From assembly GCA_977030845.1 (NCBI GenBank), contig OZ365111.1, positions 47,988,001 to 48,052,000 on the forward strand: 64,000 bases of DNA, written 5' to 3'. The translations under genes were made by a program, and so were the position numbers. Source of the DNA: Fimbriosthenelais zetlandica. Lineage: Eukaryota. Within the stretch, counting starts at the first letter, position 1. The number at the start of each line of letters is the position of its first letter. A model generated the notes under the pieces. It saw nothing but the letters and a program-made list of their open reading frames with translations, ran no database searches and was not told the DNA's origin. Shown piece after piece: positions 33,124-46,160 of the stretch.

Positions 33124-34390
33124 CCCAGCGGGCACAGCACGTGGTAATGACGAGGAAACTTGGTGGCAATTGGGGAATTTGGTGGCACCCCCAAATAACC
33201 ACATATTTTCCACGTGTTTTGGTGACGTGGTAATGCCCACGTGAATGTCACATATTTTACATGTGAAAATACCCACGTGGGAAACTTGCCACATGTTTTC
33301 CACATGGTTTTCGTCACGTGTAATGTGGGAATGATATTCACGTGGATATGACATGGTATTTTGGTGAAAGTAACCATGTGGCGTCTGGCCACATGCTGTC
33401 CACGTGATTTTCCTCACGTGTATTTTATGGGGGGAACTGATGTGGATGTCATGTGATAGATGTCACGTGGTGAACTTGCCACGTGATATCAATGTGGTGT
33501 TGGTGACAAAAATATTGGGGAATTACAGACACGTGGATATCACATGGGTTTAACATTAAAGTAGCCACGTGGATTTTGACCATGTGTTTTCTATGTGGTT
33601 TATGTCACGTAGATATTATAGGGGGGATGTGACGTAAATATCACGTCTTTTTAGTAAAAAATTCCCACGTGGCAAATTGCCACATGTTTTCCATGTGGTT
33701 TTGGTGACATGGGTTTTAGGAGGACAAAGTGACGTGGATATGATGTGGCTCAAAGGTGGAACCAGCCTCGTGGCAAATTGCCACATGTTTTCCATGTGGT
33801 TTTGGTGACATGGGTTTTAGGAGGACAAAGTGACGTGGATATCATGTGGCTCAAAGGTGGAACCAGCCTCGTGGCAAATTGCCACATGTTTTCCATGTGG
33901 TTTTGGTGACATGGGTTTTAGGAGGACAAAGTGACGTGGATATCATGTGGCTCAAAGGTGGAACCAGCCTCGTGGCAAATTGCCACATGTTTTCCATGTG
34001 GTTTTGGTGACATGGGTTTTAGGAGGACAAAGTGATGTGAATATCACGTGGTTCAAAGGTGGAAGCAGCCTCGTGGCAAACTGGCCACATGTATTTCACG
34101 TGGTGTTGGAGACGTAGGTTTTCAGGGGAGAAAGTGACATGGTTATCATGTGGTTCTGACGTGGAAGCAGCCTCGTGGCAAACTGCCATGTGTTTTTCCT
34201 GTGGTTTAGGTGACATGGATTTTTTTGGAAAAAAGTGTAGTAGAGATCACGTGGTTCAAATGTGGAAGCTACCTCGTGGCAAACTGGCTACGTGTTTGCC
34301 ACATGGTGTTGGCTATGTGTATTTTACTGGAGAAAATGACGTGGTTATCACGTGGTTTGAAGATGGAAGTTTAACACATGGAAAACTGGG
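33124..34390. repeat. Left subterminal CACGTG-rich array of the CACTA element
   Basis: About 17 exact CACGTG by hand count plus many CACATG/CATGTG variants, with roughly 100-bp periodicity. Confidence 0.9.
33668..34376. repeat. 101-bp tandem repeat, about 7 units
   Basis: CGTGGCAAA recurs at 33668, 33769, 33870, 33971, 34072, 34174 and 34275. The first units are nearly identical and later ones diverge. Confidence 0.9.
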
Positions 34391-36800
34391 CACTTTTAAA
34401 CAACCAACTCTAAACAATTATAATATGAACAACAGGGCACTAAATTAGAGAAGGGACGCTTTCATCTATTGACAAGTCGTTGTTTAAGGAAGTGAAAGAA
34501 GTTATACAAATGTACCTGAATGGTGGGGAGCTGTACGATATATATATAGTATATATACCCCCACCATATAGACATATCTATCTATATGTCTTTAACACTA
34601 ACCTAACAAAAGTTTTCCATGCAGACTTATGCATGGGAAATGATCTAAATTTTGGTAGGTGTGTGTGTGTACATGTACATACATGTATTACGACTTGTCT
34701 CCCTCAAGAATGATAACTAATATTTGATCTCATATGGTGTATCTTGTGAAATTTTGATGGCATTATGCAAGACATAAATTCAAATTTAAGAAATTATGAA
34801 TGAATATTCCGACTATAGTGTGGAATAGTTGGTCATAAGAAGAGAATCAGAACACCAGATATCAAAATTAACTTTAAACCCTTTTCACTGATCGACTTGC
34901 CCAGGTCCCCCTTTTAGTTTTTCTTTTTGATGTTGAATCATAACATTAACAATATAATGAATGCATTGATGTTGAATAATAACAATAAAATGCATTTGCC
35001 TACCTACACGAAAAACAATGAAATAATATGCTATTACTAGGTTTGAGTTTGTTATATCGAAACGAATGTAAAGAGTGGGTTCTGTCATTGGGTTGAAATG
35101 TTAGTTTTGAAAGATATAATATTATTAATTGATCATATAGGCGGGGCAGGTCATTTGATTTACAATTGGAATTTATAATAGAGTATTAGGGGAGGTATCT
35201 ATCTACTCTTACAGTGTAGAAATAAAGCTATACCTACAAAAATATGATAAAGAATAACTAGCAATGGCAAGTCTATGTTTGACCATCGAGAGCCATGCAG
35301 TAGGTAAGGGTCAAGGGGTAAGAGATGAGGTAAGGTGGCGTGGTGGCACCCTCCGTACCCTGCTGTGTGGAGGAGTCGGGTGTGGGGAGGTATCTAGGTT
35401 GTAGGAGGCTGAGTATATGAACCAGTGAACTTCCATGACCTCTCAGACCATGAAAAAGGCGCGACAATCTTTAATGAAAGACCTCTCACAATCTTCCACC
35501 TAAATATTATCGTTATTTATTCTATGTGTACTTACTACAAATAATTAACTATATGAAATCTACCTACACCTGCCCAATATACGAGGTAGTGGATTTTATT
35601 ATCTTTCAGTCCAATCAAACATATAATACCTTTGCATTATGAATGTCTTTATAGTATTTCTCCATATATTGTTAACCAAAAGATAATGAATTGAGAAATT
35701 GATGGAAAATAAAAGGCAACACATGTGTTTGAGTGACCCCATGTGGGTAAAATATGCGCCTTCATGCATTGTGTGGAAATATATTAGAAAATGTTGTATT
35801 CTTATATTTCCTTCAGCCTTCACAAACGAATATTATTTTTAAACGCATTCTACAGATATATATTTTTGTGCTGTGATCAGATGCCGACCTCACATGCAAG
35901 ATCTGCTCACAAATCGGACCAGATCTGATCTGGCTGATCACATAAACAATATATTATATACAGATCGATGAGAGTCAGATATGTGTTAAATAGCATGTGT
36001 TTGGCTAAAATCCTTCAGAATAATTAATCCACGAACTTGCAATAAGTAGACCCCATCATTTTCATTCTTAGACAACTTATTATTCAGCACATCAGAAATT
36101 TCTCTTATATAAATCATTAATTATTAGTCATTTTCATGTAGTATTACTGGGAAATATACCTCCGACATCGCTTAAGATTATAATATTCTTTATTCTGATG
36201 ACTTGGATCTGATGGATTTGTCCTATTGTTTCACTGATAATTTAAGTCAACATATAGTTGTGTAATTATAATTTCTGTGCATTATAGGTGTGAAAATCAC
36301 CAGACGGTCTCCAATCAATTTTTGTTTCTTGAAACTGAACGGATTTGGCCTTCAGAACTTGATCCGATTTGGAGTTAATAAATTAAATGATACTAATGGC
36401 GCCTCTCCTTGAAAACTTCCTGAGATTTCTTGGATGTGGCCATGAAGACTAGTGTACTATAACAATCCAATAATATTTTGAACCTGGCTGCAGTTTAGGC
36501 GGACATCCTAAAACATGAACTTTCAATTTATACCTAAAAATGTAATAGACCTGATTGCTCCATGGGTCGAACTTTTGGGTACAAGTAATTTACATGTATG
36601 TGTATTTATATGATTGTTTCCAAGTGTCAAAATCGGCTTTTATTTCTCTTCAAAAGTGTTATAAAGTAGGATATCATTATGACAGTATATACTATTTTGA
36701 GCATCGTGTCCTTTGATATCCAGTCCATTAATGTTTCAATAACGATTCTATAGGCAGAGGGCTTAAACCTCGATATGAATAAATAACTTATATTTCAATG

Positions 36801-36930
36801 GAAACTATGGAGGTTCATAGTATTCTCAGGAGTCAACTTGCCTAAGTATCTAAATTTTCCCATAACTTGTAGTAATTTTATAGAAACTATGGAAGTTTTT
36901 GATGTACTCAGCAGTAGACTTGGCTAGGTC
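36801..36930. repeat. Diverged short direct duplication (period 82 bp)
   Basis: GAAACTATGGAGGTT...CTCAGGAGTCAACTTGCCTAAGT from 36801 versus GAAACTATGGAAGTT...CTCAGCAGTAGACTTGGCTAGGT from 36883. Confidence 0.55.
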
Positions 36931-37208
36931 AGTTTCTTTCAATCTCTTTCATGTCTAAATATAAAATAGATAACTGGTAGGTTTATTTCAGCTTCAACAC
37001 TTCGAGTCCAACTGACCAATAAATAAAATCAAGTCCTTTCCCGAGATGTACTGGGGAAAAATGCCGTGTTGGTGATGTTAGTCAATGAGCATGATATTAT
37101 GATGTCATTGGGAGGAGGGGACTGGAGTAGGAAGGATGCGGGCACGTCTACGGTAGGACTGGAGGAGGGGAGGAGGGGAGGAGGCTGAGGGGACACTCAT
37201 GGATATAC

Positions 37209-37295
37209 ATTGGGGCGGGGGCAATAAAATAAACCGTTGACCTACACCTGACCTGGAGAGACCGTGGTGATGTTATAGCTAGGGTCAAAAGGTCA
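37209..37295 (+). promoter_or_regulatory. Promoter-like module 1 inside the CACTA element, with DR5 and DR2 nuclear-receptor repeats
   Basis: ATTGG 37209, GGGGCGGGGG 37212-37221, A-rich box 37223-37233, TGACCT-ACACC-TGACCT 37238-37254 (DR5) and GGGTCA-AA-AGGTCA 37282-37295 (DR2). A donor GTAAGT follows at 37405. Confidence 0.45.
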
Positions 37296-37625
37296 CAATT
37301 CACCGGAAATGTCTAGAAAGGAAAAGCCCTTTAGCTGCCTACAGAGGTAGGATGACAGTTGACGATTTGAACTCGAGCAGTCCAGACGTGCACAGAGCGA
37401 GTGTGTAAGTATGGACTTTATATACTATTATCTTTTTAATTTGTTGGAAGGCCTATCTGGCTCAGAAAACATATGTAACCTTTCATTAAAAACAAATAAT
37501 CAAGCATTATTTAATTTGTCTATAACATACTGATATTGCACTCTTCACTAAAATACCACTTCGTTTTTGAGGGCCCTACATTGAAGCTACATGTATTATA
37601 ATGCAAACCTTTACTGATATTTCAG

Positions 37626-37686
37626 ATGCATATATAGTTCGCACATGAGGAATTCATAGACACTCGGCCAACAAAGTCATGGACAG
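37626..37686 (+). other. Candidate 61-nt exon (5' UTR or non-coding) inside the CACTA element
   Basis: Acceptor TTTACTGATATTTCAG| and donor CAG|GTATGA. All frames contain a stop. An ATG (GTCATGG) lies at 37679 just before the donor. Confidence 0.3.
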
Positions 37687-38056
37687 GTATGATTATTATT
37701 TTACTGTAATTATCAATTTATGTCACCGTTTTGGAAACTAAAAAGCACATTGTTGATTTATAGAATCAATACAAGTTTATAATGAATCAGATATTCCATA
37801 CCTTGCCTTCAGATCTCGTATACTAATCAAATTTTGTAAGATATTAAACCGTATATATTTGTTTCTTTTTACCCAGCAAACTAATTATATTTGTCTTTTC
37901 TAACTAGTTGAAGACCAACGCCCTACGGTAATGGGTCAGCTGAATATGAAGGGGCTAAACCCAGTGTGAAACTGGTCTTTGAATGGCACTCCCATCATAG
38001 GTGTGTATGAATTATTATGGCCGACATATATAAACGGGTGGAGGAAGAGGACCCCG

Positions 38057-38097
38057 GGGAGGTGGGTGGGGGTAGGGAGGTGGGTGGGGGTAGGGAG
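38057..38097 (+). repeat. G-rich 18-bp tandem duplication with G-quadruplex potential
   Basis: GGGAGGTGGGTGGGGGTA twice, followed by GGGAG. Confidence 0.7.
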
Positions 38098-38269
38098 AGT
38101 GAACTGTGGCGGGGATCACCCCCATACCAATTTTATCATTTAATGTCAGGTTTATCATCTAATTTCATTGGAAACGAAAAACATCGGGGTACGCTAATAG
38201 ACATGTATCTATAGGAGTTAAAGATTGATCCACATTTGCATGAAAGGCCCGTTACTGCCTGTTGTAACA

Positions 38270-38430
38270 CCCGCCTAACCTTCCCCGCCTATTGGTCCAC
38301 TGGGTCAGGGGGCTTGGCCCCGCTCAGCCAATCAGAGCACAGTAAACTATAAACAGATGCGAGTCGCTGGGACGCTGACCCCGTCTTGACCTGATAAGCC
38401 CCGCCTGGGTGTGTCCCTCATCCCCCGCCC
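38270..38430 (+). promoter_or_regulatory. Promoter-like module 2 inside the CACTA element, with a DR5 repeat
   Basis: GC boxes at 38270 and 38283 with two more near 38399 and 38422, ATTGG 38291, CCAAT 38329, TATAAA 38348-38353, and TGACCC-CGTCT-TGACCT 38376-38392 (DR5). Confidence 0.5.
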
Positions 38431-39158
38431 TCATCCCTAGTCTCTTCCACCCCATCTCTGCCTCCCTCGTCTCACTCAAATTTTGTTAGCTCAAAAAGTA
38501 AAGATCAAAATACACACTTAACAAATACCACGATAGGCGTCTATAATTATTGATTGCTACACTGCGACAAAGGAAAGAAACGAGTTCATGGACTGGTTTC
38601 ATAATGTGGGATTCATGTTTCCTCAATGACCAGTCATGGAGGAGAGACAGTGCGACCTCTACTCATTTTCGTATTATATGTCTATCACTATGGTTCATTA
38701 TCCTTTATAATTATGGCATCCATACATTTAGAGCAAGCATGGAAACTAGTTTTCGTGCTATGGTGGGGAAGACAGGTACTGTAGAGGCATGGTCACTTAC
38801 AAGTGGATTAGTATGCTACTGATGACTTGCACTTGCTTGTCATTAGGGAAAAGTGTGAAACGCTTATGAATTAAAATACTGACTGTAATATATCTAATAT
38901 GGGAGTTTAAATCAGACATGATTATAGACACAATTGGTTTCAGCCGAATATTTTTCGTTATTATTTTTAAAATTGAAAAGATAACATAAATTATATCCCC
39001 CTCCCCACCTACCCTGACCGCCGCCAAATCCCCCACCCTCACCCAGGCCAAATCCACGTCCCAATCATAATAAAAGTATTACTGTAGTTTTAGATTTTTA
39101 GATTTTCATTCCTAATAACATGAGCAAATAAGGGGGGAATAATATTTTTTAATTATCA

Positions 39159-39658
39159 TTCCTTTTGTGATCAATTCAGCCAGAATATGTCTAACCATTG
39201 CTGTTGTTTTACATGTTCATACAGTAATATATATACTATAATTATACTATATATATATACTATAATATATAACTTTAATCATTTTAACTTATTGAAATAA
39301 TAGGGAAGGGGGAGGAAGGGCAGGGGCGGGACAGGTTTGTGCAACCCCCAACCCCTATGAAGGTCTGCCTTATATTTCTAAAATACAAAATTATAGTTTA
39401 CACCAGCCTATATTGTCACCCCTGACTTTAGCGACACCTTTGGCGCCTTAGTTGACTTGAGCAAACACATAATATATATTAATACCTCATATATAAACCG
39501 ATCGACTTTTAAAATTATATGAGATTTTGCTAACTTTTAATCAATCAATCACTTTTTTATATCAAAAAGATATTGTACATCTTCCTTTTGTGATCAATTC
39601 AGCCAGAATATGTCTAATCATCGCTGTCTTAATATTTTACATGTTCATACAGTAATAT
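39159..39658. repeat. About 70-bp direct repeat pair (39159-39230 and 39582-39658)
   Basis: TTCCTTTTGTGATCAATTCAGCCAGAATATGTCTAA...TTTTACATGTTCATACAGTAATAT occurs twice, 423 bp apart. Confidence 0.85.
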
Positions 39659-39686
39659 TACTATAATTCAATTTTATTCATTTCAG

Positions 39687-39960
39687 AGTGTGCCCAAAGA
39701 CAATGTTGATGGCCTGAGCTTAAAAGACTACACATGGGGCCATAGGAATAGATAGAGACTACCATTTGAATGGAGCAGATATCAATTTCTTAAACATTTA
39801 TTGTTCTAAATATTGTGGAGCTATCAGCTCGTTAGAATATAAGTGACAATGTATGGTATCATAATGAAGGTGCATGTGAGTGTAAAATTGTGGACAGAAT
39901 GGAAATGTATTCATGTATATCTTCCTATGTTATTAAAAGAAATAAACATTAAAAACAACT
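39687..39960 (+). other. Candidate terminal exon with poly(A) signal inside the CACTA element
   Basis: Acceptor ATTTTATTCATTTCAG| before 39687. AATAAA at 39941-39946 sits just upstream of the right subterminal array. Confidence 0.3.
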
Positions 39961-39974
39961 TTCTATTGTCTGCC

Positions 39975-40571
39975 TATATGGATCAAATCCATGTGATTTT
40001 GACCACGTGAATTCCACGTGGGAGGAATCATGTGTATTTAGCTTGCATATATACCACCAAAATAACATGTGGCCAGACCACATGGATTCCACGTGATTTT
40101 GCTCACGTGATATCTATGGAGAAAGATTTATGGGAATTTAATGAAACATAGACCACCAAAATATCTCGTGATTTCCATGTGGCCAAAATCCTGAAAATCC
40201 ACGTGAATTGGACCATGTGATCTCCATGTGGTCAAGAACCTTTGGATTCCACATGATTTTGGCCACATGATTTCAACGTAGAAAAATTCACGTCTATTTG
40301 ATTTGCATATACCACCAACATTTCTCGTGATTTTCATGTGTCAAGACCACATGAACACCACGTAGGTTTGGCCACGTCATTCGAACCCAGCCAAAACACG
40401 TGGATAATATGTGGTTTTACAACGTGATTTTCACATGACTTGGCCACGTGTTTTCCATGTGACAAAATCCACGTCTATTTGATTTGCATATACCACCAAA
40501 AAGGTAACGTGATTTTCCCTTCACCAATCAACGTGTATACCACGTGATTTATACGTGCTGTGCCTGCTGGG
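39975..40571. repeat. Right subterminal CACGTG-rich array of the CACTA element (inverted relative to the left array)
   Basis: About 8 exact CACGTG by hand count. Recurrent CACCAA(A/C)A words here mirror the T(T/G)TTGGTG words of the left array. Confidence 0.85.
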
Positions 40572-45363: not shown

Positions 45364-46160
45364 CAGGGCCGTAGCCAGGATTTTTTCGAGGGGGGCTGGC
45401 GAGTGCGGAAGGGGGTAAATGATAGCGCCGTAGGCACCCACCGGGGGGTAAAAAAAAAAATTGAAATCTAGAAACCCGGAGATGCGATTTTCCGGCACCT
45501 GGGACAGAAAATGACTGATGCTTGTGAACTCGCCTAGCGGGGGTTTACTAGGTATTTGAACATAGAGACATAGGCTTAATTGAAATGACCGAAAAAAGTA
45601 GGCCTAGCCTAGGTAGGCCTATTGGTGGCATGATACCTCAATGAGACAGCACTATAGAATAGGCCTAGCATTGGGCTCACTGACAAATAGGCACCGTCAT
45701 GATATAGCCTAACTGAAAAAAAAAAATGAAATCTAGAAGCCCGGAGATTTCCCAGCACCTGGGCAGAAAATGACTGATGCCTGTGAACTCGCCTAGCGGG
45801 GTTTTACTAGTTATTTGAACATAGAGGCATAAATTGAAATGACCAGCAATAGTAGGCCTAGCCCTAGGTAGGCCTATTGCAGGGGTCCAGCCAGACTCCC
45901 TAAGCAGGGCGACCTATACTATAAATCCATGGTTTTCTCAAATCAATCTATGTTCTATAGGCCTAGGCCTATTTTTGATATTTCAAAATAGATTAGAGTA
46001 ACGCACTATGTCAGTAGGCCTAAACTTAGCAAAAGAATCTAAACTGGGAAAAGAATCGGAAAATCGCCTGCATGGGGTGCCGCCTTAGGAGCCTAGGCCT
46101 ACTGGGGGCCAGTGACAGAACCCTTTGTGGGGGCCCAGGGGGCGAAGCCCCCGGAAGCTC
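45364..46160 (+). mobile_element. Nested, probably truncated CAGGG-family element related to the 13412 element
   Basis: It starts CAGGGCCGTAGCCAGGATTTTTT, versus CAGGGCTGTATGCAGGATTTTTT at 13412 (3 differences in 23). GGGGGCCCAGGGGGCGAAGCCCCCGGAAGCT lies at about 46128-46159. No matching right end was found, so the end coordinate is approximate. Confidence 0.5.
45449..45879. repeat. Duplicated unit of about 165-175 bp (period about 265 bp)
   Basis: Poly-A then TGAAATCTAGA...CAGAAAATGACTGATGC.TGTGAACTCGCCTAGCGGGG...TAGGCCTATTG, starting at 45462 and again at 45727. Confidence 0.85.

What the first reader, a model, noticed from the sequence alone, without database searches (positions are those of the whole stretch)
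37209..38430. Two perfect DR5 repeats and a DR2 (retinoic-acid-response-element geometry) in twin promoters inside a transposon
Seen: TGACCT-N5-TGACCT (37238-37254), GGGTCA-N2-AGGTCA (37282-37295) and TGACCC-N5-TGACCT (38376-38392). Each DR5 lies just downstream of a GC-box/CCAAT/AT-box set. Under equal base frequencies a perfect RGKTCA-N5-RGKTCA is expected about 0.015 times in 7.4 kb. Known: DR5 and DR2 are the canonical RAR/RXR spacings, though other nuclear receptors also use such half-sites. Inference: a nuclear-receptor-responsive cassette that transposition could spread. This is the most novel-looking signal in the window.
Basis: partly seen in the sequence, partly recalled or inferred. 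Interest (0 to 1): 0.7.

Follow-up and report, generated by a model that had tools for sequence, protein, structure and literature searches.

The report
Nuclear-receptor half-site pairs inside a transposon
Three perfect hormone-receptor-type motif pairs do sit in the non-coding cargo of a jumping gene and are denser there than chance predicts, but nothing shows that they form a repeated, mobile or retinoic-acid-responsive switch.

Summary
TGACCT-n5-TGACCT lies at 37238-37254, GGGTCA-n2-AGGTCA at 37282-37295 and TGACCC-n5-TGACCT at 38376-38392. They sit inside a 7.4-kb element bounded by terminal inverted repeats (33124-40571).

The clustering beats shuffled sequence. At least 5 direct repeats within 7.5 kb occurred in 0 of 1000 shuffles. 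Nulls taken from the real sequence are much weaker. RGKTCA is in the top 0.6% of 9,216 equally degenerate patterns inside the element. It is unremarkable over the whole window.

The "twin promoters" share no detectable sequence similarity. They have no CpG-island signature and no downstream coding frame. No second copy exists in the window. No sequencing run was listed, so transcription and conservation across copies could not be tested.

Most likely (about 0.5) these are consensus-grade but unselected, latent sites in GC-rich, promoter-like patches of the cargo. Receptors would bind them in vitro, as they do Alu DR2 sites. Genuine nuclear-receptor-regulated promoter modules remain possible (about 0.3). 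A retinoid-specific cassette spread by transposition is unlikely (about 0.07). The scan has flagged nuclear-receptor half-site pairs elsewhere in this genome; those notes are unchecked. Interest is low to moderate.

The parts
37238..37254 (-). Perfect DR5: TGACCT-acacc-TGACCT (RGKTCA read on the minus strand). It starts 5 bp after an AATAAAATAAA box.
   Evidence: Read directly; listed.
37282..37295 (+). Perfect DR2: GGGTCA-aa-AGGTCA, in the opposite orientation to the DR5 27 bp upstream.
38376..38392 (-). Perfect DR5: TGACCC-cgtct-TGACCT. It starts 22 bp after TATAAA (38348-38353).
35418..35441 (-).
37209..37233 (+). First motif set: ATTGG (37209-37213), GGGGCGGGG (37212-37220) and two overlapping AATAAA (37223-37233). 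It can be read as a promoter or as a poly(A) signal.
   Evidence: It is one of only two loci in the window with CCAAT, a strict GC box and an A/T box inside 80 bp.
38270..38353 (+). Second motif set: CCCGCC-type boxes (38270, 38284), ATTGG (38292-38296), a GGGTCA half-site (38302), CCAAT (38328-38332) and TATAAA (38348-38353).
   Evidence: It qualifies only with the loosened GC-box definition.
35140..35153 (+). GGCGGGGC directly abutting a single AGGTCA half-site, inside a third CCAAT/GC/AT motif set (35093-35219).
33124..33142 (+). Left terminal inverted repeat, CCCAGCGGGCACAGCACGT.
   Evidence: It matches the right end at 18 of 19 positions; 0.01 matches expected by chance.
40553..40571 (-). 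Right terminal inverted repeat, CCCAGCAGGCACAGCACGT on the minus strand. AA flanks both ends.
33668..34368 (.). 5' subterminal tandem array: 6.9 copies of a 101-bp unit rich in CACGTG/CACATG words.
39990..40550 (.). 3' subterminal region of shorter, irregular CACGTG/CACATG-bearing repeats. It contains no RGKTCA half-site.

Best explanation
The motifs are real, consensus-grade nuclear-receptor direct repeats. They lie in the non-coding cargo of a non-autonomous transposon with terminal inverted repeats. They concentrate in three short patches that are GC-richer than the AT-rich cargo around them. These patches also carry CCAAT, GC-box-like and A/T-box words.

Most likely the sites are unselected, latent sites. 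An RXR heterodimer would bind them in a test tube: RAR/RXR on DR5 and DR2, other partners on DR4. They are not parts of a duplicated, conserved or mobile retinoid-responsive cassette, and by themselves they do nothing measurable at this locus.

Shown: motif presence, local excess, position inside the element, lack of homology between the two 'promoters', absence of coding capacity. Inferred: in-vitro binding competence, by analogy with annelid and oyster receptors, and lack of selection.
For: The motifs are at the stated coordinates.

The two 'promoters' do not align, and BLAST with word size 7 at E<=1 finds no similarity between them or with the 35.4-kb cluster.

There is no other copy of the terminal repeat or the interior in 64 kb.

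CpG o/e is 0.57-0.74 in the patches against 0.54 for the window, so there is no protected-promoter signature.

No open frame longer than about 93 aa lies in the 34.4-40.0 kb interior. None of the window's 137 frames of 75 aa or more hits Pfam.

Nulls from the real sequence are modest. Short-range word pairs are generally twice expectation. TGACC is tied for ranks 5-10 of 501 words in the interior. RGKTCA is in the top 0.58% of same-shape patterns in the interior and 12.8% in the whole window.

Mammalian genomes hold 5,786 (human) and 8,846 (mouse) consensus DR5s, so such matches are abundant genome-wide (PMC1785376).
Against: Shuffle-based tests are strongly significant. Five direct repeats within 7.5 kb occurred in 0 of 1000 shuffles. 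Given 22 half-sites placed at random, the expected number of direct repeats is 0.38 and 5 or more occurred in 0 of 20,000 trials.

Five of the window's six direct repeats lie in 8.7% of its length.

Only five non-low-complexity patterns of 9,216 reach this level in the interior, and two of those are this same signal.

Three of the window's four CCAAT/GC/AT motif sets lie in the interior. Each carries half-sites, and both DR5s fall in such sets, which cover under 1% of the window.

The spacers between half-sites are unrelated, so only the half-sites repeat. That is the pattern expected of binding sites, not of slippage.
Confidence: 0.5

Rival explanations
1. Genuine regulatory modules. The GC-richer patches are real promoters or enhancers, either captured from host genes (a Pack-type element) or left over from the element family's own gene promoters. 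Their direct repeats are working sites for some nuclear receptor (an RXR heterodimer, COUP-TF or another), not necessarily RAR.
For: Direct repeats of half-sites exceed every shuffle. The signal is among the top few non-low-complexity patterns in the interior. Half-sites co-locate with rare CCAAT/GC/AT motif sets. Both DR5s have the same orientation and lie 5 and 22 bp downstream of the A/T box, that is, around a predicted start site. The spacers are unrelated, so the half-sites alone repeat. An unchecked note describes another element in this genome carrying a CCAAT/GC-box promoter and a mini-gene (s1-223635).
Against: There is no transcript evidence, since no run was listed. There is no CpG-island signature and no gene downstream. 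The modules are unrelated in sequence. No second copy is available to show conservation. The first A/T box is equally a double AATAAA poly(A) signal. Both the motif class and the motif-set definition were chosen after seeing the sequence.
Confidence: 0.3
2. One reading: a retinoic-acid-responsive (RAR/RXR) cassette of twin promoters that belongs to the transposon family and is spread by transposition.
For: DR5 and DR2 are the RAR/RXR spacings (PMC1785376). Annelid RAR/RXR binds DR1, DR2 and DR5 in gel-shift assays (PMC5821490). Oyster RAR and RXR bind DR0-DR5 in yeast one-hybrid (PMC9656583). The motifs lie between intact terminal repeats.
Against: The 'twins' are not homologous. No other copy of the element or its cargo was found. 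The additional cluster includes a DR4, which is not a retinoid spacing. DR spacings are shared by many receptors. Whether this animal has a ligand-binding RAR is unknown.
Confidence: 0.07
3. Replication-slippage or micro-duplication origin: each pair arose by tandem duplication of an 8-11-bp unit, so the pairing is mutational rather than selected or random.
For: Short-range direct pairs of 5-mers are twice expectation in this window, so such mutational processes do act here. A degenerate third unit (GACC) follows at 4-5 bp in two of the clusters.
Against: The bases after each half-site do not repeat: ACACC against GGAGA, and CGTCT against GATAA, at most 1 of 5 identical. Tandem Repeats Finder reports nothing at these sites.
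Confidence: 0.04

Closest known systems
Alu-borne DR2 retinoic acid response elements of primates (Laperriere et al. 2007, PMC1785376)
   Same: Consensus RGKTCA direct repeats lie inside a mobile element. Most such sites are latent, and only some are occupied by receptors.
   Different: Alu DR2s are part of the family consensus and occur in over 100,000 copies of a SINE. Here the sites lie in the apparently unique cargo of one DNA transposon copy, no second copy is known, and the spacings are DR5, DR2 and DR4.
Canonical RAR/RXR response elements (DR5, DR2, DR1 of RGKTCA); the same spacings are bound by annelid RAR/RXR (PMC5821490)
   Same: Exact half-site consensus, direct orientation, and 5-bp and 2-bp spacers.
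   Different: Binding, ligand response, linkage to a target gene and evolutionary conservation are all untested. Here the DR5s would straddle a predicted start site instead of lying upstream of it.
Pack-type non-autonomous DNA transposons (Pack-MULE, Pack-CACTA) that carry captured host fragments
   Same: Intact terminal repeats and subterminal repeat arrays enclose non-transposase DNA that contains promoter-like motif sets.
   Different: No recognisable host exon or parent locus was found, so capture is not shown. The termini begin CCCAGC, not CACTA.

Membership tests
Retinoic acid response element (RAR/RXR site) | Two RGKTCA half-sites in direct orientation with 5, 2 or 1 bp between them | tested here: met
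   DR5 at 37238 and 38376, DR2 at 37282 and 35418.
Retinoic acid response element (RAR/RXR site) | Bound by the RAR/RXR heterodimer of the species | not testable with these tools
   The organism is not known to me. Only analogy is available: annelid and oyster receptors bind such repeats (PMC5821490, PMC9656583).
Retinoic acid response element (RAR/RXR site) | Confers a ligand-dependent response on a linked promoter | not testable with these tools
   No expression data; no sequencing run was listed.
Retinoic acid response element (RAR/RXR site) | Half-sites and spacing conserved among copies or orthologues | tested here: inconclusive
   No other copy in the window. The single metagenome hit was a chance match. 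The viral scan was empty.
Transposon-borne hormone response element (Alu-DR2 kind) | The motif lies within the boundaries of a mobile element | tested here: met
   All sites lie between the terminal repeats at 33124-33142 and 40553-40571.
Transposon-borne hormone response element (Alu-DR2 kind) | The motif is part of the family's shared sequence and recurs in many copies | tested here: inconclusive
   The interior has no similar sequence elsewhere in 64 kb. The rest of the genome could not be searched.
RNA polymerase II promoter (CCAAT/GC-box/TATA type) | CCAAT, GC box and A/T box within about 100 bp in a consistent order | tested here: met
   The first site meets the strict definition. The second meets only a loosened GC-box definition.
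RNA polymerase II promoter (CCAAT/GC-box/TATA type) | A transcription start and a transcribed unit downstream | tested here: inconclusive
   No RNA run was listed. There are no coding frames downstream and no Pfam hit. GT/AG-bounded blocks at 37.3-38.0 kb do not give an open frame when joined by eye.
RNA polymerase II promoter (CCAAT/GC-box/TATA type) | CpG retention relative to surroundings (protected from germline methylation) | tested here: not met
   CpG o/e is 0.57-0.74 against a window mean of 0.54.
CACTA/EnSpm (CMC) transposon (context element) | Termini beginning CACTA or CACTG | tested here: not met
   The termini begin CCCAGCRGGCACAGCACGT; CACAG starts only at base 10.
CACTA/EnSpm (CMC) transposon (context element) | Subterminal repeat arrays | tested here: met
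   A 101-bp array of 6.9 copies at the 5' end and shorter CACGTG-bearing repeats at the 3' end.
CACTA/EnSpm (CMC) transposon (context element) | Target-site duplication of 2-3 bp | tested here: inconclusive
   AA flanks both ends, but the 3-bp flanks differ, TAA against AAG.

The most novel reading that the evidence does not exclude
The cargo of this invertebrate DNA transposon consists of working promoter modules wired to RXR-heterodimer (possibly retinoid) signalling. The element family carries them to new loci, which would make it a cut-and-paste counterpart of the Alu-DR2 story.
Probability: 0.07. Interest if true: 0.6.

Novelty: new member of a known kind. Interest (0 to 1): 0.25.

Why it matters
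If the sites were bound and the cargo recurred in other copies, this would be an invertebrate DNA-transposon example of mobile elements seeding hormone response elements. That process is documented so far mainly for primate Alu SINEs. As it stands, this is one locus with untested consensus motifs. It mainly shows that shuffle-based rarity estimates overstate significance compared with nulls drawn from the real sequence.

Tried and rejected
(1) RNA or DNA read evidence. The look-up of sequencing runs listed no run, so read laying could not be used.

(2) Other copies in the window. Self-BLAST of the interior and a terminal-repeat pattern search with 3 mismatches found only the element itself.

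(3) Other copies in public collections. A 22-nt flank of the first DR5 gave one metagenome hit (L001). On reading, it is a chance match in an unrelated contig that looks bacterial and coding. The terminal-repeat core gave nothing in viral contigs. No eukaryotic genome collection is on hand.

(4) Reaching copies through spurious ORFs. Ten ORFs of the region are not in the protein collection, so I did not spend homology searches on them.

(5) Coding content or organism identity. None of 137 stop-to-stop frames of 75 aa or more gave a credible Pfam hit; the best E-values were 0.004-0.005. Rfam found nothing.

(6) Homology between the G/C-rich patches. MAFFT alignment of six patches shows only low-complexity resemblance. 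Nineteen such patches occur across the window.

(7) Slippage origin. Rejected because the spacers do not repeat.

(8) Earlier-findings search by sequence.

(9) Extended half-site readings. Checked by eye against my recalled RORE/Rev-erb (WAWNT-RGGTCA) and NR5A/ERR (TCAAGGTCA) consensus for the DR2. Neither fits.

Full report
**Observation**

Reading 36900-38700 confirms every motif at the stated base. TGACCT-acacc-TGACCT is at 37238-37254. GGGTCA-aa-AGGTCA is at 37282-37295. TGACCC-cgtct-TGACCT is at 38376-38392. That cluster is TGAACC-ag-TGAACT-tcca-TGACCT at 35418-35441, a DR2 and a DR4 sharing the middle half-site.

**Setting**

All four clusters lie inside a 7.4-kb element bounded by 19-bp terminal inverted repeats. 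These are CCCAGCRGGCACAGCACGT at 33124-33142 and 40553-40571. They match at 18 of 19 positions, and 0.01 matches are expected by chance.

- The element has a 101-bp tandem array of 6.9 copies at 33668-34368. It has shorter CACGTG/CACATG-bearing repeats at about 39990-40550.
- The termini do not begin with CACTA. Only AA is shared by the two flanks. The 'CACTA-type' label of the neighbouring note (s1-191797) is therefore not verified.
- The interior has no frame longer than about 93 aa. None of the window's 137 stop-to-stop frames of 75 aa or more gives a credible Pfam hit. Rfam finds nothing.
- The element is thus non-autonomous and its cargo is non-coding.

**Is it more than chance?**

Half-sites are not enriched in the window as a whole: 61 and 60 per strand against 60.2 expected.

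Against dinucleotide shuffles:

| Test | Shuffle result | Observed |
|---|---|---|
| DR5 in the window | mean 0.16; P(>=2) = 0.01 | 2 |
| DR0-8 in the window | mean 1.5; P(>=6) = 0.007 | 6 |
| 5 or more direct repeats within 7.5 kb | 0 of 1000 shuffles | 5 |
| Half-sites in the interior (34401-39950) | 11.2 +/- 3.4; P = 0.0025 | 22 |
| DR0-8 in the interior | mean 0.115; 0 of 2000 shuffles reach 5 | 5 |
| DR0-8 with 22 sites placed at random | mean 0.38; 0 of 20,000 trials reach 5 | 5 |

Shuffles ignore the fact that real DNA is rich in short-range word repeats. Nulls drawn from the real sequence are weaker.

- Direct pairs of 5-mers at gaps of 0-9 total 1647 against 799 expected in this window.
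- In the whole window, 25% of 5-mers as abundant as TGACC have at least as many pairs. In the interior, TGACC is tied for ranks 5-10 of 501.
- Among all 9,216 patterns with the same degeneracy shape as RGKTCA, 53 (0.58%) reach 5 or more pairs in the interior. Only five of these are not low-complexity, and two of the five are this same signal.
- In the whole window, 12.8% of patterns reach the observed count.

The excess is therefore real and local, at roughly the 1e-3 level per region. The motif class was picked after seeing the sequence, and this genome alone has 685 windows with notes. Mammalian genomes carry 5,786 (human) and 8,846 (mouse) consensus DR5s (PMC1785376), about 2-3 per Mb. That matches my shuffle rate.

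**Are there twin promoters?**

- First site: ATTGG, GGGGCGGGG and AATAAAATAAA lie at 37209-37233, directly before the first DR5.
- Second site: CCCGCC-type boxes, ATTGG, CCAAT and TATAAA lie at 38270-38353, before the second DR5.

Such sets are rare. With a strict GGGCGG box there are only two loci in the window, one of them the first site. With a loosened box there are four, three of them in the interior, and each of those three carries half-sites. This is the best argument for real regulatory modules.

Several points count against the reading.

- The two regions do not align. BLAST with word size 7 at E<=1 finds no similarity between them or with the 35.4-kb cluster. They are 'twins' only by motif content.
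- CpG o/e in the patches is 0.57-0.74 against 0.54 for the window, so there is no protected-promoter signature.
- The A/T box of the first site is a double AATAAA, so it reads equally well as a poly(A) signal.
- The GT/AG-bounded blocks at 37.3-38.0 kb give no open frame when I join them by eye.
- No sequencing run was listed, so transcription is untested.
- G-rich and C-rich low-complexity patches like those flanking both sites occur 19 times across the window. They align only as low complexity.

**Origin of the pairs**

The spacers after the two half-sites of each DR5 are unrelated: ACACC against GGAGA, and CGTCT against GATAA. Tandem Repeats Finder reports nothing at these sites. Slippage duplication is therefore unlikely. 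Only the half-sites repeat, which fits either binding-site selection or coincidence.

**Copies elsewhere**

- There is no second copy of the terminal repeat or the cargo in the window.
- The one metagenome hit to a 22-nt flank is a chance match in an unrelated contig.
- A viral-contig scan with the terminal-repeat core is empty.
- ORFs of the region are not in the protein collection.
- Other first-stage notes in this genome mention paired nuclear-receptor half-sites (s1-189702, s1-217088). Another mentions an EnSpm-like element with a CCAAT/GC-box promoter (s1-223635). All three are unchecked leads.

**Mechanism and comparison**

What follows from established knowledge is limited. RGKTCA direct repeats spaced by 5, 2 or 1 bp are RAR/RXR sites, and DR4 and DR3 serve other RXR partners (PMC1785376). 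Annelid RAR/RXR binds DR1, DR2 and DR5 in gel shifts (PMC5821490). Oyster RAR and RXR bind DR0-DR5 in yeast one-hybrid (PMC9656583). If this animal has these receptors, the sites should bind them in vitro. That step is inferred, not shown.

The closest precedent is the Alu DR2. It too is a consensus site inside a mobile element and is mostly latent. Alu DR2s, however, belong to the family consensus and occur in over 100,000 copies. Here the sites lie in the apparently unique cargo of one DNA transposon.

**Verdict**

- Observation: confirmed.
- Interpretation: cannot be decided, and its 'twin' and 'spreadable cassette' parts are weakened.
- Best reading (0.5): unselected, latent, consensus-grade sites in promoter-like GC-richer patches of the cargo.
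- Genuine nuclear-receptor-regulated promoter or enhancer modules: 0.3.
- Retinoid-specific mobile cassette: 0.07.
- Slippage origin: 0.04.
- The remainder is unassigned.
- Interest is low to moderate. The kind (transposon-borne hormone response motifs) is known, and no function is shown.

Noticed in passing
window 35418-35441: Three RGKTCA half-sites in a row (a DR2 and a DR4 sharing the middle site). They lie 20 bp after a G-rich patch ending GGAGGCTGAG, the same 10-mer that ends the G-rich patch before the first DR5 (37181-37190).
   Followed up: partly
window 33124-33142 and 40553-40571: The element's terminal repeats begin CCCAGCRGG, not CACTA, and the only shared flank is AA. Its assignment to the CACTA/EnSpm superfamily, as in the neighbouring note, is not established by its termini.
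   Followed up: partly
window 33280-34372 versus 39990-40550: The subterminal regions are asymmetric. The 5' end has a regular 101-bp tandem array. The 3' end has irregular 85-260-bp-spaced repeats. Both are built around CACGTG/CACATG words, which may be transposase-binding motifs.
   Followed up: no
window 38057-38097: A perfect 18-bp tandem repeat, GGGAGGTGGGTGGGGGTA, in 2.3 copies, inside a G-rich patch between the two 'promoters'.
   Followed up: no
window 39159-39243 and 39582-39668: An approximately 90-bp direct duplication (88% identity) 423 bp apart within the cargo.
   Followed up: no
window 45451-45863: Two copies of a repeat of about 260 bp (88-94% identity in blocks), outside the element.
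   Followed up: no
whole window: There are 19 G-rich or C-rich low-complexity patches of 40-80 bp, and CpG o/e is 0.54 overall. No Pfam-recognisable coding frame of 75 aa or more lies anywhere in the 64 kb.
   Followed up: partly
L001 2158-2179: The only metagenome match to the 22-nt flank of the first DR5 lies in an unrelated contig that looks bacterial and coding. It is a chance hit and is not used as evidence.
   Followed up: yes
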